A stretch of 64,000 nt of DNA from Trichosphaerium sp. ATCC 40318 (lineage: Eukaryota > Protista > Tubulinea): the NCBI GenBank assembly GCA_038496445.1, contig JALMLS010000149.1:62001-126000 (forward strand), read 5' to 3'. The notes beneath the pieces are model-generated. The model was not told where the DNA came from. It made no database searches and was given only the letters and a program-made list of their open reading frames with translations. A program made the position numbers and the translations under genes. Positions 3,740 through 53,149 of this stretch are shown here, piece after piece. Each line of letters begins with the position of its first letter. Position 1 is the first letter of the stretch.

Positions 3740-6700
3740 ATGGACATCTTTGGTGGTATGTTCGATGATGACGAAGATGACGGCTTTGAGCTGCTAGGAG
3801 CTCCTACAGTTCGTGGTCGTTGCGAGAGGCCTCCTATGCAACCAAGAGAGGTCTCTCAATACGTAGGGCTGTTAAATCAGTAAGTTTTACTTATTTATAC
3901 ACAATTTTATACTTGAAGTTCTCACAACGCACAGAGGTGCTACTTGCTACCTAAACTCGCTCATTCAAGCTATTTATTTGACACCTGAATTTCGCGAACG
4001 TATTTACGCAATTCCACTGGATGAAATGGTTATAGACATAGACGAGGTACGATATAAACAACTTATTCAGAAAACATCTCTTCACTGACTCAATCGTTTA
4101 TTTCCGTTATTTTTTCTTAAAACTTGGCTGTCTTACCACTCTCTAGGATGATGATAAAGAACCAGAGTTATCTACTGACCAACAAAATACAGCAGCACAA
4201 CTCCTTGGTATGGGTTTCGATGCCAAACAAGTACGTACTAACACAAATATCGAAAATCTTCTAGTTGCACGCGTTTAATCAAATTGCTTAGGTGTATAGT
4301 GCTGTAAAAATATATCCCAATGACGTAAACGCTGCGTACGGCCATTTGTAACCCGTTTGACAGCTGTATTCTAATAAAAATCTAAAGTCTCGAGTGGGTA
4401 CTCGGTGGAGGTGCACAAGAGCCAGAGCCTGAAGAACCAATACTTGGACAAGGATTTGAAGATGATGATGAAGATGGAACAGAACCAGAACCAAAAAAAA
4501 AGAGGCAACGAGTTCTTGTTATTCCAAGAGAGCTACAACGACTTTTTGCAAGAATGCAAAAGTTGAACCAAGTAAACTTCCCACCTAAAGTATGATTTAC
4601 CACATAGTACTAACTTTCCTTATTAGTATGCTGTATCCACAGAAGGACTTACAGATGGATTTGGATGGAAGGGTAATGACACAAACATTCAACATGATGT
4701 ACATGAACTCAACAGGTAGATGCATTGTAATCTATTATTCCGGAATCTGATGTTTTTTTTTCTAAAATTAGGGTTCTTTTTGATGCTATTGAGAAGTCGT
4801 TACAGTCAACATCACAAAGAAACTTGATAAATGATCTTTATAAAGGAACTACAGTTAATCAAGTGAGGTGTTGTAACTGTGATAGTACGTACTAACCGGG
4901 TTTTTGTGTTGTTTGTTTTTTTTTGTTACTGATACTTTTATTGTTAGAGGTTTCAGAATCTGAGGAGTTGTTCCTAGACCTTCAACTACATCTAAGCTCT
5001 TTTATTGATAGCTATGAATCAGTTCCTGAGAGTCTTACTGCTCAGACTTCATTCGAGAAACTTGACGGTGCTAATCAGTGTGTATTAGTTGTTTTAAAAC
5101 TCCAGCAAGCTTATGTACATTCAGGTACTATTGCGACAGATGCAAATGTAAAGTAGATGCTCTCAAAGGTGTTCGTATCAAGACTTTACCACCTATTCTT
5201 GTATTATCTCTACAACGGTTTGAATACAACCTCCAGAAGGTATGAGACTAACTATCAGAGCTAACAGGTTCTGATGACTGTTTTTAGCAAGCACGTGTTA
5301 AAAATCCCAAAAAATTCGCCTTCAGTACCAGTCTTGATATGAAGGATTACTGTACCGAAGATAATATTGAAAATACAGTATATGATCTATTTTGCGTTGT
5401 GATACATACCGGAACAAATGCTGGGTTCGGTCATTATCACACTTATGTCAAGTATGTGTACAAAACTAAGTCAGTATTCTAAGGCTACATTAGAGACTTA
5501 TTGCAAGAAGGCAATTACAGCTACAAGGAAACAGATGCATCTACGGATTCAAAAGACACGGCTGATAAAGGTGGTGACAAAACAGATGAAGATGAAACAG
5601 ACGGTGGGTGGAAGGCGCCCGATGATATGCCGGCTAAGTACGAGGTACACTTTTTTGCAGGCTATTTTTATAAAATACTTTACAGGGATGGTATAACTTC
5701 AATGATTCTGTTGTTACTCCTGTTAAAACTTCTGCATTGTCAAAACAATTTGGTGGACGAACAGAGTGTGCTTGTATCCTTTGCTTCTAGTTTTCATATT
5801 GTGGTCTTAATTTTTTTGCCTTTAACTGTTGCAGATATGCTTATATACAGAAGGCGTACTTTAAGCCCACCAAGTTCTATAAAGCTACCAGAACATCTTA
5901 AGGAGGAAATAGATAAGGCCAATAAAGATCTAGAAAAAGAGAGAATAGACTACGAAGAAAAAATGGTAAATAGAGCTTACCATTATAACTTACTAATTAT
6001 TTATCCAGAGTCAAATCGATATTGAAGTGGTTCTGCCTACGTTTTACAATGTAAGAGATACCGGGATTACGTATGAACTTGTAGTGTAAAAAACGCATTA
6101 TTAATCGTATCCGTAGACCTCTCAAACCTGTCACAAGGGAAGATCATGAGATGGTGCTGAATGGGAAAAAGACTATTACAATTAAGCTTAAAAGTACAAT
6201 GAATGACTTCCGTGTTATGATAAAGGATGCCTTTGGAGATGGTACTAATGCATCCTTTTACTATAATGGGTTTATTTAACATACAAATTAGCCATTGGTC
6301 TGCTTTCAGACTTTGTAATTGATGAAGTAACAACACGTTGCGGTAAATTCCATTTGGGTAGAAGAATTAATGCTGTTGGCACTGTAAGTATTTTACTAAG
6401 TTTAGTTTGATGCTAATACCTTAGTTGTAGGATCTTATTGAATCTACTGAGTCTGGGTTAAATCACAATATCAAAGTATTAGTTTGGGATGGTAAGTTAT
6501 TCAATGGCATTGACTGGGCTGACTTGGCGACTTCAATAACACTTCAAGTACGAAAAGGAATACTAAATAATACCTTACAACCTTTAGTTGACCTGGTACG
6601 ATACTGACGGCACGGAGACTTTGCATAAAGTCTCTGTTCATGAAGGCTGTACTATTGGTGCTCTTAAAGAAGCTGTTGGTAATGCATGTGATGTTGATGT

Positions 6701-8761
6701 TGATGAATTGTTTATATGTCGTGTTGATAGGGATGAAGTAAGAAACACAATGAAGTTTGATTGTTCTAAGTCCTTTTTCTAGCATGTGTCTATTGCTTTT
6801 CTTCCTGAAACTACTTCAACATTTGATGTTGGCATTGTTGAAGGAACAATGATTACTGCTGAGAGCACACCACCTTCGTACCAAGAATGTTTATCTCTTA
6901 ACGCCTATAAAACAAAAGGATGCAGCTGGGTAATTTATGTTGTTGACAAATGCTCAACAAGTGGCTCTACTGGTTCCGTTTTACAAGTTACAGCAGATAG
7001 CGGTGTTTCTCTTTCAACAGTAAAAGATCAAGCTATTGAAATGCTAAAGGATGTTCATGATAATCTAAAAGATACAAACACAAGACTTCGGAGGTGAAAA
7101 TTGTAGTTGTATTTCTTCTTGTACTAAATTTTGTTCGTATAGGGCTCTGTTAGGAGATTCTCCTGGAGAGATTTATGCAGATGAGAGTAAAACATTACAG
7201 ACACTTGGTATACATTACCATCACGTGATAGTTTTTATTTGCTTATTGTTAATTATAGGTTTCACTGATTGTACACGTATCATTATTGAACGTGGAAGAG
7301 TTCCAAAGTCAATGGCACTTAGCGCAATGACAATCAAGTTTATTTTAGGTATGTTGATTGTTTTTGTAGCTTTTCTGTGTTGTTGCGTGTGCCATTAGTA
7401 TAACTTGCTTATTACTATCTTAGGAAGAGACGGGAAGGCAGTGCCAGATCATGATGAGTATGATATAAACTTACAGATGGAATGGACCGTACTCACTTGT
7501 AAAGAAAAGATGCAAGAGTTGCTACAACAAAAAGAAGAATCTTTCAGGTATTAAAAACCTTCTAATATAATTGTACTAAACCACATACCCATAAGATTGT
7601 ATAAAGTTAACCCAATATGGAAGGAACCTACAGAGATTTTTGATGACGAATCAAAGAAGATTCAGGTACGGTTCTTTACAAAAACAAGGAGCTAGAAGCG
7701 CCTTTTGACTTACAATTATTTAGCAATGTGGTGTAAGAAATGGTGATGTTTTATGGCTTGAGTATGGCGTACCGCCTGTTAAAGGAGAGATCAGACTTAC
7801 AGTTGAATTCGCAACATTTGAATGGACACAAAATGTAGGAATGGATTTTCTTAACTTTGATAGGTAAGTATTCTCACTTTCTTGACGTTTCTCTGCATTG
7901 TTAACCTTTTCTCTATAACCAGAGTAACAAACATTGATATATCAAAGTTTGTTACTGTAAAAAAGCTAAAGGAAGTGCTCTGCACAAAACTGGAACAAAT
8001 TGTAAGTTCAGTAATTATTATTATCTTTTTAGCTCACTTGTTGTTAGGAATCTCCTAATCATATACGGCTTTGGCGTAACAACTACTTGATACGTGGCGA
8101 TGATACTGTAAACTTATAAGTCTTTAAATTCGTTGTCTAATGTGAGTATTTGTTTAGAAACTAAGCAAGAATAGAATCAAAAAAAGTACTTCAATTGCTG
8201 TACAACTTTTATCAGAACCAGAAATCTTACCTACAAACACTCGATTACTGTTCCTTCGTAAACGTGATCCAAAGAGTAAAAAGCTGGAACCTGGGGAAGA
8301 GATAAGTGTCGTCGGAGACGTACGTATACAAAGTGAAGCAGTGCTAAATTGAACTAAAAAAACGTTTCAGCTGCGAAGTGGTACACCTAGAGAATCAATA
8401 TTCAAGGCGGTTCAACTTCAAGTTGGTGTACCAGAAGAGTTTCTTGAGTGCGCATTGGCTCGTTCTAACAAATGGGTATGGATTAGTAAACCTCCTGAAA
8501 CAGAGAAGAAAGGTGGAAATGGTGTTTGGTTCAAGGACGGAAGTGAGTTGTCTTTTTTTTTTTGGCAGATTCTCAAGTTTTTGTTTTTTAGACGTTATAT
8601 GTTGGAGAGATAAACGGGATGATCCAGAGAATACTGATGATTTTTTCTTAAAGCCTGTACGTTCGGTTAAGTCTAGAAAAAACTTTAAAGGAAATCAAAA
8701 CCCTGCACCACGAGTTATTGAACGTGGTGTCAAAATTGATACAATGTGGGTTGAACAATAA
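3740..8761 (+). CDS. USP40: Ubiquitin carboxyl-terminal hydrolase (C19), USP40-like, many exons
   Basis: Cys box GLLNQ/GATCYLNSLIQ, QHDVHELNR, His box HTGTNAGFGHY, ECAYMLIYRR; N-terminal layout (M..G.MF.DDE...PREV..Y.GL.NQG) resembles USP40; long C-terminal region. Confidence 0.85.
5774..5834 (+). other. U12-type GT-AG intron in USP gene
   Basis: 5'SS GTATCCTTT; branch-like GCCTTTAAC 8 nt before the 3' end; splicing restores conserved ECA-Y-MLIYRR. Confidence 0.85.
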
Positions 8762-8983
8762 AAAAACACAAAAATGCATGTATGAAAACTGAAGCTGAGA
8801 GAAAACCTTACACCTACAGCTCTTTTTGAGCGTTAAAACCTTCTCTCTAAATTATTTTGGTAACTTTGATTCAAATCTGAGAGCCCTGCTAAACGCGCTG
8901 AGAGTAGGAAAACGAAATTCTGATTTTTTTTTAAATCTTTACATTTTATTTAATAAATAGTTTTTTGGTGGACGTTTGGTTGT

Positions 8984-9505
8984 TCATTCCAAGTCTACAT
9001 GTTCTCTGTCCTCACTTGAATCATGTACAGTTATATCTAAGTTTCTATGAGACGTTGACATTACATGAAACCGTGGAACAACATCTGAAGAAAAGTCTAC
9101 TTGAACTCTTAAAATAGGATTAACATTCTTTGTTCTAGATCTTAGTTTAATGTTAAAACTACCACTAAAAGCTTCGCTAAGGTCTCCAAAATTATCAATA
9201 TTTACAACAGCTCTACCAATAGTCTTTGTGCTCTTCAATATTTTCTTCTTTTTTATAATCTTGAATTTCAAAAATAGCGGCTGTCCATAGCTCTTAACTT
9301 GTATAGGATCAACCGGAGTATTGAATGTGGCATCGTGTGATGTTGTTTGTTTACTTTTAGCTGACTTTTGAGTACTTTTATGTCTTTTATGATCGCATAG
9401 AGCAACTTTTATGTAGTAATCACGTGATGAGCTTCTATTCTTCATGTCACGCAAGTCTTCAATGCGTATGTATAAAAAACCTTCGTATAACGCTGTATCG
9501 CTCAT
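8984..9505 (-). CDS. Intronless C2-domain protein (173 aa)
   Basis: LYIRIEDLRDM, DYYIKV, ATFN, TIGRAVVNI pattern of a C2 beta-sandwich. Confidence 0.65.
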   Translation of the reverse strand: MSDTALYEGFLYIRIEDLRDMKNRSSSRDYYIKVALCDHKRHKSTQKSAKSKQTTSHDATFNTPVDPIQVKSYGQPLFLKFKIIKKKKILKSTKTIGRAVVNIDNFGDLSEAFSGSFNIKLRSRTKNVNPILRVQVDFSSDVVPRFHVMSTSHRNLDITVHDSSEDREHVDLE

Positions 9506-9919
9506 TCTTTTATTCTGTTATGTCTTGTTGGGTGTAGTGGCTTGAGTTGTAGTGTATTTGTGGTTTGCACTTCGAAGGTGTTTAGAAATTTGATTTTACT
9601 TTTTTTTTTCAGTTTTCCCGAACTGGATGACGTCAACATTAACGAAAAACAAAATTTCGAACGGGCCGGAAAAGCTCTTATTAGGAATTTCAAACAACCA
9701 ACAGTCACGTGATTTATGGTGGCACCTTCGAACGGTTTTTTTTATTTTTGCTTTATTCGCGAATATTTTTGTTACCGTACAACAGTTCATACCCCCTATT
9801 GTCCTAGGGCTTCATACTTAATTAATTGAGTACTTCACAACTATTTATGCGATGGTTTTGTTTATTCACATAAATCGGAAATACACTTGTAAAAATACGC
9901 TAGTTACAATCTATAGCTT

Positions 9920-10120
9920 ACAGCTACTCTTAAAACCGCCTAAGGCCAATTCTTACACAGGCTAGCCTGTAACAGTAACTGAAAAGTTCCCTAAACCGCA
10001 GAACGCGGTTTTCTTTAACCAATCAATGTTGAGTACACGAGCGTTCGCACATATAGGACCTTAGAGGAGGGTAGAGTTGTCAAAAGGATTTAGGGACTGT
10101 TTTTATTGTTTCGTTTGACA
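9920..10120 (+). ncRNA. Candidate structured non-coding RNA (unassigned)
   Basis: Intergenic segment with nested complementarities: closing stem 9920-9947/10056-10080, hairpins 9957-9970 and 9993-10011, GAACGC/GCGTTC, TGTCAAA/TTTGACA. Confidence 0.25.
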
Positions 10121-10194
10121 TCCAGAGTCTGAACGTCACCGCGGAACTTCTGAAATTACTTGAAGGCAGAAAGAGCGTTTATTGGAAAAGATGC

Positions 10195-10882
10195 TTACAG
10201 AAAAAACCTTACAATGTGAGTGGCAAGACCGAACGTAAAAGTCAAGCCTGTAGCCCAAATAGGACCTCTAATAGGCATCGAGTTTACGTATGCTATTGTG
10301 TAAAGAGTACGCATAAAGAGATACCCATACATCCAGAATTGAGCAGCGAATGGGTTTGGATTTGTGAAAACATAAACAGAAGCCAAAAGAAGGAATGGTA
10401 CAACGTTTTCTAAATCGTTTTGTTGAGCCCGACGTATCCTACCATAAAGTCAACTTAAAAGTACGTCACGTGCAGTATTAATTAAGGATCTGAACCGTAA
10501 CAAAAATAATACCTTGCAACATCTTCATTGTTCTCAACTTTTGCCGGAGGTGTTAATTTGAAATATCTGTAATCTTCAGCGTTTGGCAAGTTTGTACCTA
10601 CAAGCCGTGTCCTTACGCTAAAATATAGTCAGTTTCGAGATGAAGAAATATGCTGGATCGGTTAGCTAAAAAAAAAGCGCACGTGTGAATGCTCTTCCAG
10701 ATAATGAGACCAACAAGACCAACAAGAGAAAGTCCAAAAGTTTTAAATACTAGTGGGTCTGGAATAGATGGCGAGAATCCTGAGTTGTACGTTTGCCCAA
10801 GTAATAGAGGGTTTATGAAAGCACTGGCTACACCAAAAGCTATAGGTACGAGGTATCCAGCGATAGGTGGAGGAGCTGACAT
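10195..10882 (-). CDS. MAPEG family protein (microsomal GST1 / prostaglandin E synthase-like)
   Basis: PNAEDY, RIRRAQQNDLENV and YLFMRTLYTIAY motifs over three exons. Confidence 0.88.
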
Positions 10883-12170
10883 TGTCGGAAGCTTGACAGT
10901 TTTTGTTTGTGTAGATACTTAAGCCACATTGTTGCGGCGAAACCGGTGGAAAGAAAGGCCTGATTCGAGTAATCAACAGATTAATAAAACGAGAATCATA
11001 GTGTACAAGGTGCACCTGTATCTATAGCTTTATACTACCGTAGTTTGGATGTACACCGTTTAATGTGAAGTGAGCAGCGACAATAGTTCTTTCCGAGGAA
11101 TTAACAAAAATTTGAGTAACATTAAACCGGTGGCTTTCGGTTTTAATGCACAAGTACTTAACACGTGTTATTACGTAATCAAAAGGTTTGCACTACTTTT
11201 CGCGAACTTTGGCGCCATGTTATATTTCTAAGATCAGGTTGAAGGCCGTTTTTGGACAACATTTTTGGTCAGAAAACAGCGCACTTTTAGCCAATCGAGG
11301 ATCTAATCAATTATGCGAAAAGTACAAACCCAAGGATAATTTCATAATACCACGTGTTCATGTGCCAATCCCACAATAGGTAAGTAATACTCAATTTTGC
11401 ATTTGATTAGATTATGCGTCTCATGGTGTAGGCAAAACCAATTTCATTGTATTCACTACTTATCAACGCAACGAGAATCTATTCAGTGTATTGAATACAT
11501 AAGATGGTCTCCTAGGCGGGTTTGTGCAAAGCGTTTCTCAAAGAAAGTGAATCACTTGTGAGACTCAGACTGGAACTGTAAAAAAGCAGCCAGGAACCTT
11601 ACTCAGGATGAATACAATGCTTATTATCAACTATGTGACGAGGAGACACGTACAAGACAAATGGTTGTCGTGCTTCAGCTGCACCTAAAAGTTCAGACAC
11701 TAGCATTAGCCATCGTCGTTCAGTACATGAATGTAACAATTGCTTTCATGAGGAGCTTTCTGTAAACAACACTGCCCTTTCTACTGGGTTGCATGACAAT
11801 TTGCGGAAACAACAGTGAACTTCTTGTCAAACATAGCACAGGCTAATTGCATTGCAAAAGCAATCGCGCTGTCTGAACGAATGTGTTGTAGGCATATAAT
11901 AACGACGAATATGACACATGCTCGGCTTATTGTAACAATGAATATAACAAAAACACAATCACCGGTCAATGTGCACTGCCTAGTCGCGCAACAGTGGGAG
12001 ACAAGAAACCTTGTGAAGCAGCATGGCTCACTACATTCAAGTTTACAATCTAACGAGATAAACAATTGTTTTTTCCTATTAGAGTCTTGATCCTCAAAAA
12101 ACCGAAAAACTTTTGGTTTGTGAGTTAAGTCGAGCTTGCTAAGCTGTTTTTTTACCAATCCAGTAGAACG

Positions 12171-13520
12171 ATGGAAGGTTACAAAAAGAAAGCTGAAGAG
12201 ACTTTAACGCTTGTAAAAGTACGTCCTGTTGCTGGTTATTTCCATTTTGGAGTCATTGTTTAACGTTTTCTTGTCAGGGGCTCGTTAAAACTATCGATGG
12301 GTTTACTGAGACCAACACTGGTATTGATGGCGTAAAAGGTTCGTTTAATTACAATTTGCCTTATTTCAGGTTTAAGACCCCACCAAGTACATTCCACGCT
12401 TACAGGTAGTAGGATACACTAAACCAATGGAAGGAAGCTACATTTCGTGCTTTCGTGCCGAAGTACGTTTACATTTCGTCTAAATACAGTGAAACTGACG
12501 TTACATAGACCACAATAGATGCACCACCAAAGCAGATCCGTGATCAGTTATGGGAATATAAAAAGGACCAGTGGAACGTAGTAAGTAGCTTTAGTGGTCT
12601 AATGTTGTCATTAACCTTTTTTGCCTAAAAGGATGGCTCTCTTTTGGAATGGGAGGTGCTTGAAACAAGTGAAGACGGAAAATTACGTATTGTTCATCAG
12701 GTACGTTTAATCAACATAACCACGGCGTCGCCAAACGCTGTTGTGTTTTGAAATTTCTCAAAAAAGAATTTTCACGTTTCACCTTTATTTTTTTTAAATT
12801 CTTTTATTCGGTTACAAACACGTTTTTCTTCCCTAGGTTGCGTCCATGCCTTGGCCTATTTGGAACAGAGACGCATGTGTACTCAATTACGCATATGATG
12901 ATCCTGACGGATCATCAATGTTGGTTATTTCATCAGGTTAGTTCAGACTAATAGTGTTTGCTTTGAACTACGCTTTTACTTTTATGTTTGCCTCAATCAA
13001 AGTTAGAATGAAGAAAAGCTAGATTTTGTGTGATACAAAGCCACACAAGGCACAAGGCCAGCCATCGAGCTGGGCAAGCTTTGTTCTTCGTCCTTCATTA
13101 TGCAGATTTAATGTTCATGCTTTTGTTACTTACTTGTTTTATAGTTGAACATCCTAAGGCTCCTAAAAAGCCTACAGAACTTATTCGTGCTATTTGTACT
13201 TTCAGTGTTTACCATTTTGAACCTATTGAAGATGGTAAAAAATCAAGAGCAACACGTGTTGTTCATGTTGATCCTTGTACGTTTTTAGCAATTTGAATTT
13301 CAATCACGGGCTTTTTGCCTTCCTTATGTGTATTTCTAGCTGGATCTATTCCTGCAATGGTTGTCAACATGAAAGCAACGGTAAGGAATATTTCTTTCCT
13401 AAAAATTTCTCGGCTAGTCTAGCTTGAAGAATATCACTATTTCCGCCTTTTTATTCTTATTTTTTTCCTTAGGTTGTATGGCGATTCAAGGAGAATATTA
13501 TCGCTCACATGAAAAAGTAG
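12171..13520 (+). CDS. START (lipid-transfer) domain protein
   Basis: Spliced ASMPWPIWNRD, SVEHPKAP, IRA and VHVDP-GSIPAMVVN are START signatures; stop TAG 13518-13520. Confidence 0.88.
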
Positions 13521-13782
13521 GATACCGGATAATATCGACATGTAGTAGAATAATAAAAGACGAAAAGTGTCAAATTGAAAAAGATAGCAAAGTGTAAAGA
13601 ATTCTGCGAGTTTCAAAAAAACATAACTGTTTGGCTTTCACGGTGCAAGAACAAACCGATTTAGCCTTGTTTTACTTGGAATGCACCACGTGTAAGAAAC
13701 ACAAACATCATGCTAATCATTTATTTTGTAGCAATAAAAACATGCCGTGATAAAGTAATTGCTGGATAAACTGTTGGTACTG

Positions 13783-14316
13783 CTATTCACAGAAGTCTGA
13801 GTTTACTATCTCTGCACCTAATGCCTGGATACTGTCTCTTGAAATTGAAACGCAATCATACAAGGTGATATTGTGTACACCTACAAGCGCCTTCAAACCT
13901 TCATCTGTCACTTTTGTCGATTGTAGATTAATTTGATATACACCTGCCAATGCTTTAATACCCTCATCTGTTACATCACAACAATTTAACTGTATTTTGT
14001 GTACGCCCGCCAATGCTTTCAAACCTTTGTCTGTTACCTTGGTACATGATAAATCAATAGCGTGTACACCTGCTAGCGCCTTGATGCCTTCATCTGTTAT
14101 TGACATACAACGATACAAACTGATTGTATGTACTCCTGCTAGTAAACTCAACTGATTGTCGTTTATATTTCCATAAAGACAAATGGGCGTATTCTTCAAC
14201 AAAGGACTCCCAGAAAGCATCATCACATCGGTAGTGCTTTCGGCATTAATTCGATCATATCCGACGTGGTTATGGACAATGTCCCGCAAGAAGCGGCAAG
14301 TTTGTGCGGAATAAAG
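13783..14316 (-). pseudogene. 5'-truncated intronless LRR gene, paralog of the F-box/LRR at 43991
   Basis: LAGVHxIxL..TDEG repeats; shares LSGSPLLKNT with 43991 ORF; N-terminal F-box replaced by inverted-repeat element, only downstream in-frame Mets remain. Confidence 0.65.
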
Positions 14317-14326
14317 TGTACTAAAA

Positions 14327-14522
14327 TGTCGAAAAAAAAGTCGAAAAAATGTCAAAGTGATATTGAACTGTTCGCCACAAAGGGAGACAACTGGGTTATG
14401 GCGCTCAGTCGCCGCTAGGCTCTGCCCCCCCCAAACCCCCCCTTTCAGGGGGGCTTTCTAAATAGTTCCTATGGCATAATATAGGATAATTAGTGTGCCG
14501 AATTTTCGACTTTTTTTTGACA
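14327..14522. mobile_element. MITE-like element (~200 bp) with ~20-bp terminal inverted repeats
   Basis: TGTCGAAAAAAAAGTCGAAAA (14327-14347) vs TTTTCGACTTTTTTTTGACA (14503-14522); GC-rich core with C-runs and CCCCCC-TTTCA-GGGGGG hairpin; no clear TSD. Confidence 0.55.
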
Positions 14523-15168
14523 AAGTTCTACATATTTGGGTTTCCCTTTGACTTATACTCGATTATTTTGTGATTTGAACTTTTGTATAATATACCACTC
14601 TGTACCATATGAAGTGCCTTTATCTTAGATATCCAAACATCTCTTTCGACTGTTTTTTCCCTACATTAATAATATCACGTGATACTTTTTTTGAAACCAA
14701 ACGTGCATGCAATTATTGTCAGTGTTAGTTCATGAAGCAACGTTACGTCATTGTGTAACGGCTGACTGTTCGAAAAACCAGCGTATTCATAGAGGTCAAT
14801 GTATTCGGTGTATCAGTAACACGAGCAATGAACCAGTTGTCAAAATTATTATGTTCATGAACACTGATAGAATAGAACTGCTTGAACTCTGTTAGGCTGG
14901 TGCTTTTTAATGAGTATGCTACCATGAACTGCTGTTTTTCATTTGTCATTCTATGGCGTTTAATCCCTTCACAGAATGTGGGTGAGTCACTGATTTTGTT
15001 TTAGTCATCTTGTACGATAAAGCCTCCAACATCATATGTACACCTCCGCCTGAACTTGTAGACTTTGCAAAGAGCTTATTAAACGACTTTCGCAACGTTA
15101 CATTAAGGCTGCTATAATCACAAGATAGATTATGGCTCACAATATTGTTTATAGACATTACATAAAAG

Positions 15169-26818: not shown

Positions 26819-27305
26819 AACTTAAACATTCAACAACGACAACACAAGTTTTGTTAAAGATGCGTTTTCTACTGCTACAGACTTGATTTATACGTGTGCT
26901 ATCCCTTGCTCCTTCTTCACCTTGGCACCATAGATAGAGCGTGTAAGGAAGTGTTCTTGACCTTTTGGCATAGCTGTAAGCTAGACTTACTTATTGTCCA
27001 GGGCAATCTACTTACCAGTAAAAACACGGAATGTTTCGGAATATTTGGTGTTTTTTTCGGAACGTTTTGTGTTTTTTCGGAATAAATTCATTTCATTCTG
27101 TACATCTCCTTAAATGTTAGGCCTAATTATTTCCTGGATGAGAGCCTGTATGCTAATCTCTTGTATTGTGCCATGACCAGCCCAAAACCTGTACCACTGC
27201 CAACTCGCTTGAAAATTGTTGGTAGCACACAGTGTAAAAGGAAGAATTCGGAACTGGATTGCCTGTTTTCTCCGTCCCGATTTTTCTTGCTTTGGAACTA
27301 CTGAT

Positions 27306-29388: not shown

Positions 29389-29670
29389 CCCTAACTTACA
29401 GCGACCTTCGTATATTCATATACGTATTCCCTGCAGAGAGTTGTGAATGAACGACATCAACAAGTTGTATTCACTGATGTGTTTTTGTTTCAGTCTGATT
29501 GGAATCAACCAACACATTGTTTAGTCTTTTTGGTTTTCTTTTTAATAAAATGGAGAAAGCATCCTATTTACAGTACTTACAAGCACCCACTTTGATCATT
29601 TCGCAAGTATTTTTTTTTCATGGTATTTGCAATAGATTCTTCTTTGAGGTTTTTTTTGTGGTATGAATTA

Positions 29671-31300
29671 TTAATTCAATATTAAGGCATCATTTTCAGT
29701 TATTAAGTCAATATCTTCTTCAGTTATAAGAGACTCATCGCTATCATCATCTGTCCACTCTGCACGTACACGATACCGTTCAAGTAGATTACGTAGTTCT
29801 TTTACGCAAGGGACGTTAGCTACCATTCTTTTTTCTTTGATTGAAGCAACATTGACGTGCATGTGAAGTTCACCTTGAATTGAAAAAAAAATCAGAGCTT
29901 TTGATCAAACATCATTTCAGAAATACGGAAAAAAATCCTTACCTATCCCATCTTTGCCTTCTTTACAAGAAGATGATACAATATTATTAAGGTAGGTATA
30001 CGATTCGCTTACCTGAAACGATAGTGAGAAACAGCTAAAGTAGAAAAAACGACAAGTTTTTTTGTAAAAACAAACAATCACAAAAAAAAAAGAACAAAAG
30101 GGACTCTCGCTCTCGATCGAAACAAAACGTTCGGTACCGTTTCTTTTCTTGAGTTAAGAGAAATAAGACGTTTAGTAGTTAGAGCGACAACTTTATCAGT
30201 GCCTGGTCTTCCTGATAGGTTTATAGCAGCTATAATAAAGAACGGTATCCTACAAACAAAAAATAAGCAAAAAGCTTTTTTCTATTTTTATAAATGTCTG
30301 ACGTTTAGTAAAATAGTTTGGAAGAAACACAAAGTATTTCATACTTCGGAATAAAAAATTTCACGCAATATTTTACATAACAAAAAAAATGTTACTTGCG
30401 GTCAAATAATACAGTGAGATGATGAGATAAAATACAATCAGTAAAAAAAAATGTTCAAAAAAATTTTACAAATAAAAACAAAAAATTGAAAAAGGATTGT
30501 CTTTCTTCTTCTTGAGTACGTACCCAGTAAAAACAAAAGTGAGTGTAATACCCATGAAGGGCATATCAGTAGATAGATTCTCCGGATTATGAAATACGAA
30601 AAGTGATAAAATAAGGGAGCACGTGATGATGCCACATATTACAAGACCTAATCATTTTTTGTTATAAACAATAAATACAGCAAAACAAAGAAAGAGGAAT
30701 GTTTCACAGGAGTTTGATTTTTTTTTGGGCGTGAGCGTCGTAAAAAGCGTACTGAGGGAGATGAAAAATAATATCCATCCATTACGGTATACTCTAGAAC
30801 CTTTAGGAGAAATATTAGCAAGAAATAAGAGCGTGATGAAATGGAATTTGCTATATTTTTTTTCCCTTTGTAACCCGTTTCATATAGGATATTTCGCGTA
30901 CCAGAGGCGTGTGCCCATACTAACGATTCATCTGTTTTCAGTATTTGTTGTAAATGATCCTCCGTTTCTTCTGGCACAGCGACAGGAGATACCAAGTCGA
31001 TGCTATCCTCGTCGTCGCCCAATTTTCTAATTAGGGGAGTGAAAATGCTATTTACGCAGTACGCGTTCAATAGGCACGTACAAGCTCTCTAAAGGTGAAC
31101 CTTCAATATCATCAACTACATTCCGTGTTCGGCTCGTGCGTTGGCGTTTATGTTTAAAATACCACACAAAGCCACAAACTATATGTACAACAAAGAATAG
31201 TACATTAATGATCACTACAACAACCGGTTAAAACTAGAACCAACCAAAAATGTACATTACATAAATATAAGCTATGACAACTCTCTATATTACTATGCAT
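29671..31300 (-). CDS. Hypothetical multi-exon membrane protein
   Basis: Exons with TM segments and EDHLQQILKTDESLVWAH; last exon ORF 29671-29862; start uncertain. Confidence 0.45.
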
Positions 31301-31568
31301 CGCAGTGTATATGTGTCAATGACAGTGGAGAATTAAAATGAACAAAAACAAAGCCAGTTTGACGAAAAATTGACCAAAAGATAAAAAATGGATCCTTGCG
31401 TACTTAATTTATTCCTTTACCGGAAGATGTCGTGTTAACATAGAGGTGACTTGTACACCATTGCTTTTTTGGTTTAGTTTATTATTTCCTTGTGCTGAAA
31501 AGCCAAAAACTTGACCTGAGGTTTGTGTACAAAATTTAAATATTACAAAAGGGTCCAAGCAAGCTGTT

Positions 31569-32789
31569 TTATGCTTGTTGAAAGCGGTCAGCAACTTCTG
31601 GCCAACGTTCAATGACTTGCTCTATTGGTAAAGGAGGTATTGTTTGAGGGAACACAGCCACATTATACATGCTAGAAGAAGTGTTAACTGGCGATAAAAC
31701 AAATCTGGATAAAGTCGTAATAAAAAAGGAATAAGGCCAGAAAATACGAAAACGGTCTGAGAAAAAATATTGGAGGCATTTTCGCTTGTTTCTCAAATCA
31801 AAAAAAAAAGCGTACAGTCTTCTTAGTTCATAACAGGCAGGTGTGTCAAGGCTCATGATAGTAAAGTGATTATAAGCTTGAACAAATACTGGAACGTTCA
31901 GAAGTCCTAATACCGAAACAGCTAAATGGCAGGGTGAGTGAGGTTTTTTGTACTAGCAAAGGATAAAAAAAACCAAAATCTATGGTGTACTTGGAAAAAT
32001 ATACGGGATACTCTTAACATATTTAAAGTGTGATTTTGTCCAAAATCCATAACCTAAGCGCCATAGTGTGTTTATTGTTATGCCCATTGCGTTAAAAGTG
32101 CCCAGTCCTAACGAGTACATTAATTACAAAGCGACCATTATAATTATCATTGAAAGTCACATGTGACATTTTCTCTTTTTTGATTTTTTGTTTTTTGGAA
32201 ATCTACAAAATCTTCACGTACCAAAGGCTGCAGCAGTTAGATACTTTGGAATTAGTAATCGGCTATTTTCTTCTTTCCATTTACGCAATTCAGATGTCAA
32301 AAACTGTTCTTTGTGCATATGTGACCAAAATGTTAAGCAACCTTGTTCATCTTGCTAGTGAAGGAAAAAAAAAGATTTGAAAGTAAGTGAGACAGTGAAA
32401 TCAGGTATTAACATAAAAAAGTGCATAGATACAGTCTAAAACTCGTCTATAGTGCGGGTAGCCTAATCTTGGATCGTGTTTGTTGTAGCCTAGGCGTGTT
32501 AAAATGCGTACAACCAATAACAACTCACCTCTCGCTCTAACGTCAGACACTTTCAGATATAGCGAAACAAACGCAAGAAAAGGTATTGGCGCCGCTTGTT
32601 AAAATGTTAGTGCGCAATTAGGTAGTTAATCGTGCCTAAGTCTGGTAGGGGCTCTCTAGCATCGAGATTTGGCTCCAGCAAGACATTTCGTTGATCATAA
32701 CTTCCAAGTGAGTAGCCTTTATACCAACGCTTAGTGGTTAAATCGTCGTTTAATTCATAATCGTTGTAATACGACGTTTGCTCTACCAT
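31569..32789 (-). CDS. Hypothetical protein (7 exons) containing a GC-AG and a U12-type intron
   Basis: Hand-spliced open frame MVEQTSYYND...LGYPHYRRVLD-YEQGCLTFWSH...PACYELRR-LFVLSP...DRFQQA. Confidence 0.65.
32351..32432 (-). other. U12-type intron
   Basis: 5'SS GTATCTAT; branch TTTTCCTTCAC 7 nt before AAG; phase 1, next exon starts AT; first AG after the branch gives a stop, second keeps frame. Confidence 0.65.
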
Positions 32790-32933
32790 TGTTTTATGTA
32801 AAGCAGAGAAAAGACGAAAAGAAAAACTCAATAAAAACGTTGACCAAAAGAACAAAAAAACTGCATCAAATAAACTGAAATTTACACGATAAAACAAGAA
32901 CACGCGCCTCGTTTAATATTTTGGAGCAATTCT

Positions 32934-34063
32934 ATGGGCGTTTGCCACCCAGGTCCAAAGCCCGAACGCCATTCAGAAATAACGAAGCAGCTACAAAAAG
33001 AAAAACGTGAAAGTCGTCACAAACTATCTATTCTGTTTCTTGGCGCAGGGCAAAGCGGTAAAAGTACATTTTTCAAACAAACAAAAGCAGCGCACAATAT
33101 TATATCTAAAAGCGAGCGGTATGTTTATATCGAGATTGTGCGCGATAGTATAGTAGAGGCGTTAATACAACTCTGCGATACTGCAACTTCAGATAGTCTA
33201 GACTTAAGCTCTAAGGCCCAGGAAGCTAAAGACAAGCTGTGCGATATAGAAACATGGAGTGCAGGTATGTAGCCAAAAAAAGGTTTTGTGCCCGAATAGC
33301 CACTAATAGTGTTCTTGAAGATGTAGCTAGGCTGTGCTCCATTGTGTGGAATGATGACAGCGTACAGGCTGTTCATAAGGCTGGGTCTAACTTGTCTATA
33401 CTTTGGTGCATTGACGCATTTATGAAGGATATAGACCGTATAGCTGACGAGGACTACGAACCAAGCGATAATGATATGATTTGCTCTCGCGTTAAAACTA
33501 CAGGCATAAAAGAGATCGCAATAGAAGTGGACAACTCCACAGTTACATTCACAGATGTTGGCGGCCAGCGATCGGAAAGACGGAAATGGATCCATTGCTT
33601 TAATGGGGTAAACGCAGTGCTATATTTGTGCGCTATAGACGAGTACGATAAATATGAAGGAGAGGATAACTGCTTGGTTCAAAGTATAAAGCTATTCGAA
33701 CAAGTTGTTAACGAACAAGCGCTACAGGGCAGTTTGATCATTTTATTCCTAAACAAGGCCGACCTTTTCAAAAGAAAGTTTGACCATGTTAACCTACAAG
33801 ACCACTTTGAAGGATACAAAGAAGGACAAGACGATTGGGTTAACGGTGTAAAATACATAGAAAAAAAGTTTAAACGGAAATGCAGAGGACGTGCTGTACA
33901 AACGTATGTAACGTGCGCAGTTGATGGAAACAACTGTAAAAAGGTGTTTAATAGCGTAATCAAGGACGTGAGGCGTCAAAGCCTTATAAAATCGGGATTG
34001 ATTCCAGAAGGAACAACAGCAGTTGTTGAAAGAAACAAAGATCGAAGAAAGAACTCCATATAG
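32934..34063 (+). CDS. Heterotrimeric G protein alpha subunit (one intron 33265-33309)
   Basis: MGVC lipidation start; GAGQSGKST, RVKTTG, DVGGQRSERRKW, FLNKAD, TCAVD. Confidence 0.95.
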
Positions 34064-34356
34064 ACTATCCTTAAGGGTAGTTTCGAGCATGAGATGATGA
34101 CGAGTGGATGAGTTTGGGAGGCTGTGATGTTATTGAAATACATAAAAAAAAGATAAGACGCTTGTATAGTTGTACGAGAGTATGTATACAGTAACGAAAA
34201 TGTAATTGTAGAAAAAAAAAACAAAGGTCAAGAGTTGACACTCAAATTGGAAAAAAAATATTTTGGACTTTTTTTCGCCCAAAGCTTCTAATTTTGATTT
34301 AAATACTGAAACGACAACTTCTACATAACGCCAGTTATAAATCACCTAACGTTACC

Positions 34357-37300
34357 ATGTTTTTGGAGTGGATAGCGTTGCTAGGTTTCATACCTAAGGA
34401 CACCAGTACGTTGCACTATAAACCTATTTATATTTTTCTGTACGCTATATTGAGGCTTGGTGGTGTGAAATGGTGTACTTTCGGCTGTGCTAACCTGATC
34501 TTGCAGCATCTGGCGTGTACCTCACGTTTCCAGTCGCTTTACGGCGCTCTGCGGCTCAACAGACGGTAGACCATCTACTGAATAGCCCGCGAGCGAACGC
34601 AGAGTTATCTAGCGAAACGCACGTTAAAGTGGTTATGGAGGTAATGGGCCAAGCGTTTGCATTAGACATTGCCGACAACGCACAAATTATTTCGGACGTT
34701 ACAGAGTTATACAAGAGGTGGCTTCTTTCTGGAGAGAACAGACCTGCTCCAATTGCTAATAACGAACCTAAATTTTTCAAGGTACGCGTTAGGCACAAGT
34801 ATAAATTTGGCTCTATTGCACTGCACGCTATCTTTACGTCTGCAATAGCTAATTATACCTTCCTAAATAGTTGCCTTTTTGGTGTTTTAGAACTAATGAC
34901 ACCTTGATTTTTTTAGGAGATATTTAAGCATTTCTCTCTCTTATTTACGCCAAGAACAACGCAAAGACCCTCCCCTGATATGGTCCTAAACCATGCCGCA
35001 TTATGTGCCACAGTTCTGAGCATAATTGATCAGCTGGGTAAACAATATTTAATGTGATTTTTTTTTTTTACATTTTTTCGCTTCGTGCGCATGAACGTTT
35101 TCAGTTGTTAACTGGAATACTCAGGTAAGGACTATGGACGTAAAATGGATAAAGACACGTGGGAAACTATACTTCTTATTATGCTTGGTATATGTGATCA
35201 TCTGTTGCAAGCTTCAGAGGCAGTACGTTTAAAATAATAAAATACCACATTATTTGAGCAAACTTTTAAACGAATATTAATATTTTTCTACCTAGGCCGC
35301 TCACGCAGCGTTGGCAAACAATCTATGCTCACAATTACTTAAAGTATTATTTTCACTATGGATACGCTCTGAAACTCAAAATGATGTTATGTGGGATCAC
35401 TTAAAGCTATTAATGGTCAATTGGCGTCATAGACTACCAGTTATATATCAATGGAATGCGACATGCACTTCACTAACAAATGCACTAAGAAAGGTGCTTT
35501 ACACATCACATAATTCTCCTACAGTTAACCTTCAAATGTACGTGGCTACTTATGCTCGTTCGAAACATTAATGCTCCTATAGGCTTGGTGAGAGTGATGT
35601 TATACAAATACCAACCGAACATGTTAAATATGTGTGGTACCGATGCTTGCGTATCTTTTTTGGGTGTTTTGAATTTTTTTTTATTTGTCATTATTTCGTT
35701 GTTGTTTGAACTTCTGAGGTTTGATATGACTTTGATATTATTGTAAAATTATTCCTTGACTTTATAGATGTTTTGGGAGATTTAGAAGAACTTGAAGCGC
35801 CTCGGAATTACTTGGAAGCAATGAAAACTGTTCATGTTTTATGCAATCTTTTTATACATAATAAAATACATAACTCTGACCACTCTCCACGAGGAGGAAG
35901 TGGCGACTCTGTACGTTTTTTCTTTGCACACCAAATATGTTAAATTATCATGATTTGTTCTACTCACTTTTTTTTTGATTATAGCAAGCTATCAAGTCTA
36001 GACCTGATGGTAATGTTATTTTGCATATTTTTGGACCTTTCTTGTTTGAGGCAATAAATAGATACAAGGCTGGGTACGTTTTAATGACCTCAACAATAAG
36101 AAAGACAAGAACATTGTGTTCTGATTTTTTTTTTCAACAAAAGGTTCGAACAAGGAAAGGCTGAAGCTTATGAAACGTTATGCACGTTGTTTACAAGTTG
36201 TTGTGATACGAATTTCCTTGATACATATCTATCTGCATTTTATAGAGGCTTAGAAATCGTACGTAGTTGTTTTTTTCAATTTCTTATTATTATTGTTCGC
36301 TTATGTTGCATGTAGGGTATTGCTATGAGTCCAATGTTACTGGATGTTATCATTAAAAATTGTGCCCAGTTGTTCCATTGTGAATTACGTGGTACACGCC
36401 TATTATTGCCTATATTCATCTATGGTACTGAGAAACTCCTAAACAGCAATGTAAGTACCTTCATTTAGAGGGTTTTTTTTACTCATTTGATTTTTGTTTA
36501 GGGTCGTCTTGAAGGAACTAAAACACCACCTGCTGTACTAAGAAGATCATGCTATCATATTCTTCAGTATCTAGGAAACATGGCACACCTCTTTTACAAT
36601 CAAACAATCCGTCAGACATTGTTTACAGATATCAAGCTAAAATATACTACACACAATCAAGTACTATTTTATTTTCGATTTATACAAGATTAACCATTAC
36701 TGTAGCTCACTGGATTCGTATCAGAGATGTTACTGAGTAAGCTCAAAACGGAAGACGATAACCAGAACAGAATATTGTTGATTTGGCATGTAGTAACGTA
36801 CGTACACTTGTTTGTAAGGACCAAATTTAATTTGTGATTAGGTTCATGTTTGAAAACGCTGATAATTTGCGTGATTTCCCAAGAGCTGTTGTTATGTTAT
36901 TAGTAGAGAAGTTGAATGGAGCTCCTTTGGATCCTACTGTAACTCATGAACTTATTAATGCTCTAGCAGAAATATCTGAGTTATACACACACGTTGAAAA
37001 CGAAAAAGAGGTAAAACGTCAAGCTGACACTTGTCAATCAAAAAAAAAAAGAGAATTTTATGTTTCGTTCTATTGTTGTTGTATACGCGTTTATACTTTT
37101 TTAGATCATGGCTAAGTATCTATCTAACTCACTTTGTGATTATATTTGCAAATTGATGAGCAACTCTACTAATAGCGAAGCTTTGGTTCTTGCATCTTAT
37201 AATTGCTTGACCAGATGGGTAGTACAGGTACAAACTAGTACTCTTTATAAAACTCGTAATTAATTGCCTTAAATAGGGTCAATGGATTGTTAAAATACAT

Positions 37301-39550
37301 GATCGTACTGTTTCTAGACGTATATTCGAGGTTATTGAAATTGGTAAAACTGGCGAGCTTGTGCGTACTGCTTTTTTAGATGATAACAATTTGTTTTTTT
37401 GATTTACTTTAATTTTTGTTACCACAAATGGTCGAACTGTCTTTTCTTACTGTGGCTGTGGTTAATTTTTTATTTCAAGGGCAAGAGACCGCATGAAGAT
37501 GATGAGGACGTCGTACCAGATGCTAAGCAACCACCAAGGAGCTTGTCTCCAAATCTATCGAGACGTGAAGAAAAATCTCTCAAGGATAGCAAAAAACATG
37601 ATAGTGACTCACGTCGCAATACAATGGTCTACAATACAACTCCTCAAATCAAGGCATGTATCTTCATGTTGCCATCTTATTACTTACTATATCATACAGA
37701 AAGCAGCTACAGCACTCAATAATTGCATGCTGCAGCACTTTGATTCGTATCCACCACCTTCAGGTCGTTCCTGCTCGTGTCTTCAAAACGAAGAGGTATC
37801 TTTTTATTATTGTTTAAATGTGGAAGCTAATGCGGTTTAAAGGATATTTTAAAGATGACAGGAGTAAAAGGAATACGTGCCGTATCAGTGTTTGCTTTTG
37901 ATGATACTCTCATTTCCGTCATTCGTCACCCACGTGATTCAAGTACGTCCGTTCAATCAAGTGCTCAATTCTTATATCTCCGAAACAGAGGGTAATTGCT
38001 TCTTGCACTTGATGGTGCGCGATCCTATCGGTAAATTTTTGTGGAAGATTAATCTCGAATATGCTCCAGTAGAGAAGAACAAAGACCCACCTTGTATCCA
38101 ATGCTGCCTGTTTTTTTTTTGGAATGTTTTGTTTGTTATTTATCTTTGACTATGCAGATGTACCAACTGTATTCCACGGAAATATGATTGGTGATCATAC
38201 ACCTGGATATGTTGATAAAGCTCTTGTAGATGATTTAAAGTTATACCTAAATGATGAAGAGAAGCGTCATCATCAACGTGTCTATGAAAGCGGTATGTAC
38301 TTTGGATAAAGTCACATCTCATAAAAAAATATCTTATCATACTTTTTTTAGCATCGACACGTAATAGATTAGAACATGCTATGCTCAAACCTATAAAATA
38401 TAAGTAAGTAAATCATTTAAAATATCTATTGATCCTAACGATTGTCTAGACAAAAAGTTGACGTGTCTACAAGACCTCGTTCACTCCCAAAGATAGATAC
38501 TGAACAAGATTTCACACCAATCAGATTATTCCTTATGCACTGGGGATTCCTTGGATTGGTATGTCACATTTTAATTTGATTCGTTTCCCTGATTTTTGTT
38601 ATAGCCTAATGCAACAAGATTTCACTTATTGCGTACCTTTGATGGCTCGGAAGTGTTCAAATACTCAGATAATCTCAAACACCTTGATAGTTTACCAGAG
38701 TAAGTCTTTGTCTTTTTTTTTCTTCTTCTCGTGTTAACATGGTGCACATAGGCGAGAAACATTCACTGTTGGTATTGTTTATATTCCAAAAGGAGCTTCA
38801 AGTGAAGTAGAAGTATGGGAAGCTGCTAACGTACGGCATAAGTGAGTTTATGTATTTGTAACTAACTTTTTTGTTACTAAAGATCCAAAAGACTTTCTTC
38901 AACTTTATTGATCAAGTCGGTTGGGAAATCACTTTATCTCAACATACAGGTTTCACAGGACGCCTTAATCCACGTTATACAGGAGATAAAACACGATACT
39001 ATGCTGATAGCGCCCAAGAGGTATTTTAGTTGTTGTAGTGTTTATTATTATTTTACTGACGCATTTCGTAGTTAATATTCCATATTGCTCCACTCATGCC
39101 TAATACAATGTACAAGAGATTCCTCATAAAGGAAGATAAGGTTGCAGTAATGTGGCTCGAGAATGCGATGGACTGGCAACCAAAGAAGAGTGTTGTTTCT
39201 GAAGCTGGTGTTATTATTGGTGTCATTCCTTTAAGCATGGATCTGTTCTGGATTAAGATACATACTGAACAGAAGGGATTGATGCAAATCGGACCATTAA
39301 GACATGATATGGTAGTAACAAGCCATGTCTTACCAACACTGGTTAGACGCACTGTCATTAATGCTTGTAATATGGCCAAGGATCCAACTGCGCCTACACC
39401 GTACGATTTTATTCTATTTTTTTATGTTTTGATGTTTGACTTTTTTGTGTTTGTAGGTATTCAACAAGGAAACAATGGATTGAGAATTTTGTGAGAACAC
39501 AAAAACTTAATGTTGGTTTACGTGATGTTCATACACATATGATTGTCTAA
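34357..39550 (+). CDS. RALGAPB: Ral GTPase-activating protein beta subunit-like (Rap/Ran-GAP domain)
   Basis: Start MFLEW; WRHRLPVIYQWN, VRDPIGKFLW, RETFTVGIVY, GW..HTGFTGRL, IFHIAPLMP, IGPL, LPTLVRRTVINA. Confidence 0.8.
35651..35767 (+). other. U12-type intron in RalGAP gene
   Basis: 5'SS GTATCTTT; branch TTCCTTGAC 7 nt before the 3' end; phase 1; restores WYRCL-H-VLG. Confidence 0.75.
38094..38157 (+). other. U12-like intron in RalGAP gene (duplicated at 50148-50212)
   Basis: 5'SS GTATCC; branch-like TCTTTGAC 7 nt before the 3' end; phase 1, next exon starts AT; keeps frame DPP-Y-VPTVF. Confidence 0.6.
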
Positions 39551-41177: not shown

Positions 41178-41199
41178 AGTTGTTTGGAAAAACCCAATA

Positions 41200-53127: not shown

Positions 53128-53149
53128 AGTTGTTTGGAAAAACCCAATA

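What the first reader, a model, noticed from the sequence alone, without database searches (positions are those of the whole stretch)
5774..38157. Four independent U12-type introns in ~50 kb of unique sequence: a possible minor-intron-rich genome
Seen: introns at 5774-5834(+), 32351-32432(-), 35651-35767(+) and 38094-38157(+) all begin GTATC(C/T). Each carries a CCTTRAC-like branch (CCTTTAAC, TTCCTTCAC, TTCCTTGAC, TCTTTGAC) 7-8 nt from the 3' end, is phase 1, and is followed by exonic AT. Each is needed for frame. Established: these are minor-spliceosome hallmarks, such introns are normally a very small share of introns, and large expansion is known mainly from Physarum. Inference: this lineage retains an active, possibly expanded U12 system with relaxed 5'SS and a short fixed branch-to-3'SS distance. 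One intron sits in a gene with no recognisable family, hinting at intron gain.
Basis: partly seen in the sequence, partly recalled or inferred. Interest (0 to 1): 0.75.

Follow-up and report, generated by a model that had tools for sequence, protein, structure and literature searches.

The report
Four real minor-type introns, no expansion
The four interruptions are real introns of the rare 'minor' (U12) kind, and this amoeba-like genome has the machinery and several hundred such introns, a normal share rather than a Physarum-style explosion.

Summary
Each restores the reading frame, is phase 1, starts GTATC(C/T), has a U12-like branch motif 7-8 nt before the 3' end, and is followed by exonic AT. 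They lie in three genes, not four: a USP7-like hydrolase, a gene with no Pfam match, and one RalGAP-like gene that holds two.

The genome (70.3 Mb) encodes U11, U6atac, a probable U12, and PDCD7/59K and SNRNP25-type proteins. U4atac was not found.

Whole-genome pattern counts show that GTATCY is specifically coupled to a TCYTTNAC branch 5-9 nt before AG: 557 matches against 210 in the control. Common U2 donors show almost no such coupling (716 against 528). About 29% of the coupled introns are followed by AT, a known U12 hallmark.

I estimate 400-600 U12-type introns, perhaps 0.2-0.4% of all introns. That is about human-like and high for an amoeba, but 40-fold below Physarum. An unselected 200 kb sample showed no enrichment, so this window is a local cluster.

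The 5' site is genuinely relaxed: only about a third read GTATCCTT. The branch also sits unusually close to the 3' end.

Other windows of this genome were already flagged for U12 introns in this scan. No RNA evidence could be obtained.

The parts
5774..5834 (+). Intron 1, 61 nt, phase 1, in a USP7-like ubiquitin hydrolase gene. Perfect U12 5' site GTATCCTTT; weak branch CCTTTAAC 8 nt before AG; followed by AT.
   Evidence: Splicing gives the ECA-Y-MLIYRR motif. The upstream exon 5288-5479 scores UCH 43.9 bits.
32351..32432 (-). Intron 2, 82 nt, phase 1, in a gene with no Pfam family. 5' site GTATCTATG; branch TTCCTTCAC 7 nt before AG; followed by AT.
   Evidence: No Pfam hits for eight exon-bearing segments. 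Listed in the whole-genome match lists as C56:94349-94432.
35651..35767 (+). Intron 3, 117 nt, phase 1, in the RalGAP-like gene. 5' site GTATCTTTT (the +6T variant); perfect branch TTCCTTGAC 7 nt before AG; followed by AT.
   Evidence: in-frame TGA if retained. Listed as C56:97651. GTATCT with the strict branch gives 116 against 64 in the control.
38094..38157 (+). Intron 4, 64 nt, phase 1, in the same RalGAP-like gene. 5' site GTATCCAAT; branch TCTTTGAC (a C-to-T change that would still wobble-pair with U12) 7 nt before AG; followed by AT.
   Evidence: Listed as C56:100094.
50148..50212 (+). Paralogous copy of intron 4 (65 nt) in the second unit of a 12 kb tandem duplication. It has the same 5' site, branch and AG|AT.
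   Evidence: Listed as C56:112148.
3740..8761 (+). USP7-like gene, host of intron 1. A rough model gives about 22-26 introns, mostly 40-70 nt U2-type.
   Evidence: The model is rough, built by a reading-frame chaining script.
34494..39491 (+). RalGAP-like gene, host of introns 3 and 4. RALGAPB_N domain at 35296-35568 and Rap_GAP at 38862-39491.
37796..37842 (+). Contrast case in the same gene: a 47 nt phase-0 intron starting AG|GTATCTTTT, with a CTAAT branch 13 nt from the 3' end, followed by GA. It looks U2-type.
36370..61297 (.). Tandem duplication. Unit 1 is 36370-48428; unit 2 runs from 48428 to about 61300, at 97.6-99.4% identity. Unit 2 is interrupted at about 55765-57105.

Best explanation
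All four are genuine spliceosomal introns removed by the minor (U12-dependent) spliceosome.

Inferred mechanism, from what is established for other organisms:
- U11 pairs with the GTATC(C/T) 5' site.
- U12, through its GUAAGGAA box, pairs with the TC(C/T)TT(R)AC branch motif. This leaves an adenosine 9-10 nt from the 3' end as branch point.
- U6atac then replaces U11.

In this amoebozoan-like genome the system is complete and ordinary in size, roughly 400-600 introns. It has two local habits. The 5' site is loosely conserved beyond position 6. The branch-to-3'-end distance is short.

The window is a chance cluster of such introns, helped by two lying in one gene. It is not a sample of an expanded class.

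Shown here: the sequences, frames and motifs; the snRNA and protein genes; and the genome-wide statistical coupling of the 5' and branch motifs. Inferred: which spliceosome actually removes each intron.
For: Frames and motifs.

snRNAs:
- U11 scores 66.4 bits and U6atac 51.9 bits, both over Rfam cut-offs.
- The U12 candidate scores 39.2 bits over its full length. It has the canonical GUAAGGAA box and an Sm site. Its 5' UGCUAG can pair with U6atac UUAGCA.

Proteins: PDCD7/59K scores 42.5 bits. A Ubiquitin_4 (SNRNP25-type) hit scores 31.9 bits.

Coupling of 5' site and branch, as matches against reversed control:
- RTATCCTT with the strict branch: 150 against 17.
- GTATCT with the strict branch: 116 against 64.
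- GTATCY with the relaxed branch at 5-9 nt: 557 against 210.
- The three commonest U2 donors, GTAHGT: 317 against 247 and 716 against 528.

Excess per site is about 0.5% for GTATCY and 0.1% for GTAHGT, although most GTATCY sites are not donors at all.

AG|AT follows 115 matches against 13 in the control. The CA[G/C]|AU boundary is a published human U12 hallmark (PMC10853781). None of the four has AG at -2/-1, which that paper links to U2 use.

The paralogous copy of intron 4 keeps all signals.
Against: - No RNA evidence.
- U4atac was not found.
- The U12 candidate is below Rfam's gathering score.
- Intron 1 has a poor branch motif: two mismatches, or an extra bulged U.
- Introns 2 and 4 match the 5' consensus only through position 6.
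- Intron 2 has C where the consensus has a purine.
- GTATCT can also head a U2-looking intron in the same gene (37796-37842).
- My total of 400-600 rests on pattern excesses over a reversed-pattern control and on assumed shares of motif variants.
Confidence: 0.75

Rival explanations
1. At least one of the weaker cases (intron 1, 2 or 4) is removed by the major U2 spliceosome and only resembles a U12 intron.
For: U2 5' sites in this genome are loose: GTACTA, GTATTA and GTGAAA appear in the rough models. A U2-looking intron in the same gene starts GTATCTTTT. The U12 branch core TTRAC also fits the U2 yUnAy rule. Intron 1's branch has two mismatches, and intron 2 has C at the purine position.
Against: U2 donors show only a 0.1% excess per site for the relaxed branch at 5-9 nt. 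U2-type GTATCY introns with such a branch should therefore number about ten genome-wide, against about 300 observed. All four also have AG|AT and lack exonic AG before the 5' site. U2-looking introns here place CTAAY 13-20 nt from the 3' end, not 9.
Confidence: 0.25
2. The genome has undergone a Physarum-like expansion: thousands of U12-type introns with transformed signals that my patterns miss.
For: Four or five in 64 kb would extrapolate to about 4,500. The 5' site is relaxed and the branch is close to the 3' end, as in Physarum. Several other windows of this genome were flagged for U12 introns.
Against: - The relaxed whole-genome pattern gives an excess of only about 350.
- AT-AC forms add about 36.
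- The unselected 200 kb sample has no enrichment of GTATC donors: 8 of 380 against 1.7% for all GT.
- RTATCCTT occurs at the frequency expected from composition in the window: 7 against 6.6 (expectation is my calculation).
- The U12 box is canonical, not Physarum's GCAAAGAA.
Confidence: 0.04
3. These are not introns but frame disruptions in decaying genes, or assembly errors.
For: No transcript evidence was obtainable.
Against: Each has exact GT-AG ends that restore long open frames. One restores a conserved catalytic-domain motif. The signals recur hundreds of times genome-wide.
Confidence: 0.02

Closest known systems
Canonical U12-type (minor) introns of animals and plants
   Same: RTATCC 5' site; TCCTTRAC branch pairing with a canonical U12 GUAAGGAA box; bias to phase 1; AG|AU at the 3' exon; no exonic AG before the 5' site; share of all introns probably a few tenths of a percent. 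For comparison, human is 0.276% (PMC10639083).
   Different: Only about a third of the GT-AG class read GTATCCTT at positions 7-8 (one search list). About 20% have T at +6. The branch motif ends mostly 5-9 nt before AG, shorter than the roughly 10-13 nt I recall as usual in human. The introns are very short, 50-120 nt.
Physarum polycephalum expanded minor-intron system (Larue, Elias & Roy, 10.1101/2020.10.12.336362)
   Same: Probably the same supergroup. GTATCT variants occur. The branch lies 9-12 nt from the 3' end. TTTGA-containing branch variants such as TCTTTGAC are present. U6atac carries the 'CC variant' GCCGA box, also reported for Physarum and Acanthamoeba (PMC2396436).
   Different: About 400-600 introns rather than 20,899. 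The U12 branch box is canonical, not GCAAAGAA. Most branches are still TCCTTRAC. T at -1 is not enriched (40 of 115, about 35%), so there is no sign of the proposed TA-target transposon signature.
Protostelium aurantium (265) and Pelomyxa schiedti (90) minor introns (PMC10639083)
   Same: Amoebozoans with 'relatively high' but unexpanded numbers of minor introns.
   Different: The estimate here is about twice that of Protostelium. The organism was not identified, so it may be an unsurveyed lineage.

Membership tests
U12-type (minor-spliceosome) introns | Extended 5' splice site [G/A]TATCCTT | tested here: inconclusive
   Intron 1 matches 9 of 9. Intron 3 is the +6T variant GTATCTTTT. Introns 2 and 4 match only GTATC(C/T). 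Genome-wide, that short form is still coupled to the U12 branch.
U12-type (minor-spliceosome) introns | Branch motif TCCTTRAC close to the 3' end | tested here: met
   Intron 3 is exact. Introns 2 and 4 have one mismatch, which for intron 4 is a wobble-compatible C-to-T. Intron 1 has two mismatches. In all four the motif ends 7-8 nt before AG.
U12-type (minor-spliceosome) introns | Exonic context: AU after the 3' site and no AG before the 5' site (PMC10853781) | tested here: met
   All four have AG|AT. The bases at -2/-1 are CT, CT, GC and TT. Genome-wide, AG|AT gives 115 against 13.
U12-type (minor-spliceosome) introns | Genome encodes U11, U12, U4atac and U6atac | tested here: inconclusive
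   U11 and U6atac are over their cut-offs. U12 scores 39 bits against a 53-bit cut-off, but has the canonical box. U4atac was not found. Lopez et al. also reported no U4atac for Physarum or Acanthamoeba.
U12-type (minor-spliceosome) introns | Genome encodes proteins specific to the U11/U12 di-snRNP | tested here: met
   PF16021 PDCD7 scores 42.5 bits. PF18036 Ubiquitin_4 scores 31.9 bits. Its link to SNRNP25 is from my own knowledge.
U12-type (minor-spliceosome) introns | Removed from RNA, with a lariat at the U12 branch A, dependent on minor snRNAs | not testable with these tools
Physarum-type expanded, transformed minor-intron system | Tens of thousands of U12 introns (over 10% of introns) | tested here: not met
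   Pattern excesses are 133, 52, 347 and 36. There is no enrichment in the unselected 200 kb.
Physarum-type expanded, transformed minor-intron system | U12 branch-binding box changed to GCAAAGAA, matching a TTTGA branch | tested here: not met
   The U12 candidate reads GUAAGGAA. About 60% of the visible branches in the list are TCCTTRAC.
Physarum-type expanded, transformed minor-intron system | Transposon-like signature: TA target, giving T before and AT after the intron | tested here: not met
   AT after the intron is enriched, but that is a general U12 trait. T at -1 is 40 of 115, close to base composition.

The most novel reading that the evidence does not exclude
This unidentified amoebozoan-like lineage carries the second-largest minor-intron set known in Amoebozoa, about 500. 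Its 5' site is degenerate beyond +6 and its branch-to-3' distance is compressed, while U12 remains canonical. That could be an early or intermediate state of the signal relaxation that preceded the Physarum explosion. If the reported mitochondrial insertional editing places it near the myxomycetes, it would date that relaxation.
Probability: 0.3. Interest if true: 0.5.

Novelty: new member of a known kind. Interest (0 to 1): 0.3.

Why it matters
Minor introns are rare and ancient, and have been lost many times. Surveys list only a few protists with more than 100. A 70 Mb amoeba-like genome with several hundred, and with loosened 5' signals and a very short branch distance, adds a data point on two questions. 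One is how far U12 signals can relax without an expansion. The other is how Physarum's extreme state may have begun.

It also has a practical consequence. Standard classifiers trained on human matrices would miss about two thirds of these introns, and gene predictors may mis-splice them.

It does not overturn anything. The density is in the normal range.

Tried and rejected
1. De novo intron catalogues from 264 kb. I tried reading-frame filters, an EM with splice-site matrices, and a frame-chaining dynamic programme. All were too noisy with a weak codon model and about 100 nt exons. I used them only for rough intron counts and to see typical U2 introns.

2. RNA evidence.
- A word search with a stop-free stretch across intron 1 found nothing.
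- The representative search with the RapGAP exon found no protein from this organism; the best hit was 55% identical.
- Two metagenome scans found nothing.

3. The odd U6atac box, GCCGA instead of AAGGA, looked like possible co-evolution with the relaxed 5' site. I rejected that: it is the published 'CC variant' of Acanthamoeba, Physarum, oomycetes and cnidarians. It is the only U6atac-like locus.

4. I searched for U4atac by complementarity to U6atac. There was no candidate.

5. I tested for a transposon-like T...AT signature. T at -1 is not enriched.

7. I could not identify the organism. Unfused DHFR and TS and the U6atac variant only suggest Amorphea or Amoebozoa.
Full report
**Observation.**

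I read the four sites.

| Intron | Coordinates | Length | 5' site | Branch motif | 3' end |
|---|---|---|---|---|---|
| 1 | 5774-5834 (+) | 61 nt | GTATCCTTT | CCTTTAAC + 8 nt | AG, then AT |
| 2 | 32432-32351 (-) | 82 nt | GTATCTATG | TTCCTTCAC + 7 nt | AG, then AT |
| 3 | 35651-35767 (+) | 117 nt | GTATCTTTT | TTCCTTGAC + 7 nt | AG, then AT |
| 4 | 38094-38157 (+) | 64 nt | GTATCCAAT | TCTTTGAC + 7 nt | AG, then AT |

- All four split a codon after its first base: T|AT, T|AT, C|AT and T|AT.
- Three have lengths that shift the frame. Intron 3 is a multiple of three but holds an in-frame TGA.
- Splicing intron 1 rebuilds the USP catalytic-domain ending ...ECA-Y-MLIYRR. The neighbouring exon scores UCH at 43.9 bits.
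- Introns 3 and 4 lie in a single RalGAP-like gene (RALGAPB_N 70.9 bits, Rap_GAP 48.4 and 28.8 bits). The four introns therefore sit in three genes.
- The host of intron 2 has no Pfam match on any of eight exon-bearing segments.
- I searched exons one by one, by reference.
- No contig looked human.

**Machinery.**

The window is C56:62001-126000 of a 70.3 Mb, 642-contig genome.

- Rfam searches of the whole genome found U11 (66.4 bits) and U6atac (51.9 bits), both over their cut-offs.
- They also found a full-length U12 candidate at 39.2 bits, below the 53-bit cut-off.
- The U12 candidate has the canonical branch-pairing box GUAAGGAA and an Sm site. Its 5' end can pair with the UUAGCA of U6atac.
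- U4atac was found neither by the filtered search nor by patterns complementary to U6atac. Lopez et al. 2008 likewise reported only U11, U12 and U6atac for Physarum and Acanthamoeba (PMC2396436).
- U6atac reads GCCGA where most species have AAGGA. This is the published 'CC variant' of Acanthamoeba, Physarum, oomycetes and cnidarians, and it is the only such locus here.
- Two di-snRNP-specific protein families are present: PDCD7/59K (42.5 bits) and the SNRNP25-type Ubiquitin_4 domain (31.9 bits).

**Are the four U12-type?**

The 5' site alone does not decide it. U2 sites here are loose. The RalGAP-like gene also holds a 47 nt phase-0 intron (37796-37842) that starts AG|GTATCTTTT, has a CTAAT branch 13 nt from its end and is followed by GA.

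The test is whether GTATCY is coupled to the U12-like branch. Whole-genome pattern counts, each against the same pattern read backwards:

| Pattern | Matches | Control |
|---|---|---|
| RTATCCTT ... TCCTTRAC N4-12 AS | 150 | 17 |
| GTATCT ... TCCTTRAC N4-12 AG | 116 | 64 |
| GTAHGT (the common U2 donors) ... same | 317 | 247 |
| GTATCY N27-110 TCYTTNAC N5-9 AG | 557 | 210 |
| GTAHGT N27-110 TCYTTNAC N5-9 AG | 716 | 528 |

- From site frequencies in 264 kb, I estimate about 67,000 GTATCY and 181,000 GTAHGT sites genome-wide.
- The excess per site is therefore about 0.5% for GTATCY and 0.1% for GTAHGT, although GTAHGT sites are far more often real donors.
- If U2 introns carry this branch at no more than about 0.4%, U2 introns that happen to start GTATCY should yield about ten such cases. 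About 300 are observed.
- Adding exonic AT gives 115 against 13. That is 29% of the excess, against 6% in the control.
- The CA[G/C]|AU boundary and the avoidance of exonic AG before the 5' site are published features of human U12 introns (PMC10853781). All four introns show both.
- Introns 2, 3 and 4 appear in these lists.
- Intron 1 falls outside the branch pattern but has a perfect nine-base 5' site.

I rate introns 1 and 3 as strong, and introns 2 and 4 as probable.

**How many?**

- The GT-AG excess is about 350 matches, roughly 300 introns.
- AT-AC forms add little: 408 against 372.
- Gaps of 10-14 nt add at most 105, part of which is double counting.
- Allowing for other branch variants, I estimate 400-600 in all. 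That is about 0.45 per 64 kb.
- An unselected 200 kb of contig 1 showed no enrichment of GTATC donors (8 of 380 against 1.7% for all GT donors) and at most one or two candidates.
- With a Poisson mean of 0.45, four or more in a window has probability about 0.0013. That predicts one or two such windows in about 1,100.
- The window is thus a tail event, chosen because it looked rich.
- U2 introns of 40-70 nt occur every 150-250 nt of gene. I infer 150,000-230,000 introns in total, which would make the U12 share about 0.2-0.4%.
- For comparison (PMC10639083): human 0.276%, Basidiobolus 0.554%, Protostelium aurantium 265 introns, Pelomyxa 90, Acanthamoeba 12, Physarum 20,899.

**Local peculiarities.**

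In the first 100 entries of the low-noise list, the 5' sites divide as follows:

| 5' site | Count |
|---|---|
| GTATCCTT | 33 |
| GTATCCT + A/C/G | 19 |
| GTATCC + A/C/G | 26 |
| GTATCT | 22 |

- The 5' site is therefore relaxed beyond +6.
- Visible branches are about 60% TCCTTRAC and 25% TCTTTRAC. The rest have a pyrimidine at the purine position.
- The branch motif ends mostly 5-9 nt before AG.
- T at -1 is not enriched (40 of 115). That gives no support for the TA-target transposon origin proposed for Physarum.

**Lineage.**

- Earlier notes from this scan call the organism an amoeba with mitochondrial insertional editing.
- DHFR and TS are unfused, on different contigs. From my own knowledge, this fits Amorphea rather than Discoba.
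- The U6atac variant also fits Amoebozoa.
- The species was not identified.

**RNA evidence.**

A near relative's transcript-like protein does exist for the neighbouring G-alpha gene (96% identity).

**Verdict.**

U12-type identity is well supported statistically, though not experimentally. The relaxed 5' site and short branch distance are real genome-wide. 'Expanded' or 'minor-intron-rich' is not supported beyond a human-like share. Five other notes from this scan had already flagged U12 introns elsewhere in this genome.

Noticed in passing
window 36370-48428 and 48428-~61300: 12 kb tandem duplication at 97.6-99.4% identity. It begins inside the RalGAP-like gene, so the second unit carries a 5'-truncated gene copy.
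   Followed up: partly
window 37796-37842 (+): 47 nt phase-0 intron starting AG|GTATCTTTT, with a CTAAT branch 13 nt from the 3' end and GA after it. It is a U2-looking intron with a U12-like 5' hexamer, and serves as a negative control.
   Followed up: partly
L002 1501-1621 (G000:C20:307774-307894): The single U6atac gene has GCCGA in place of the AAGGA 5'-site-pairing box. This is the known 'CC variant' shared with Acanthamoeba and Physarum.
   Followed up: yes
window 33230-34060 (+): G-protein alpha subunit exon. A JGI-derived 357 aa protein on a 1,329 nt contig is 96% identical, so a close relative of this organism occurs in public (meta)transcriptome data.
   Followed up: partly
G000:C11:436663-437867 and G000:C73:94058-94559: Thymidylate synthase and DHFR are separate genes on different contigs, not fused. 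I used this as a weak lineage marker.
   Followed up: no
window, USP7-like and RalGAP-like genes: Ordinary introns are very short (about 40-70 nt), with loose 5' sites (GTACGA, GTACTA, GTATTA, GTAAGA) and CTAAY-type branches 13-20 nt from the 3' end.
   Followed up: partly
G000:C3:150978-151034: An intron-like stretch with a U2-type 5' site (GTATGT) and a perfect U12-type branch (TTTCCTTAAC) near AG. It is one of a small excess of such mixed cases.
   Followed up: no
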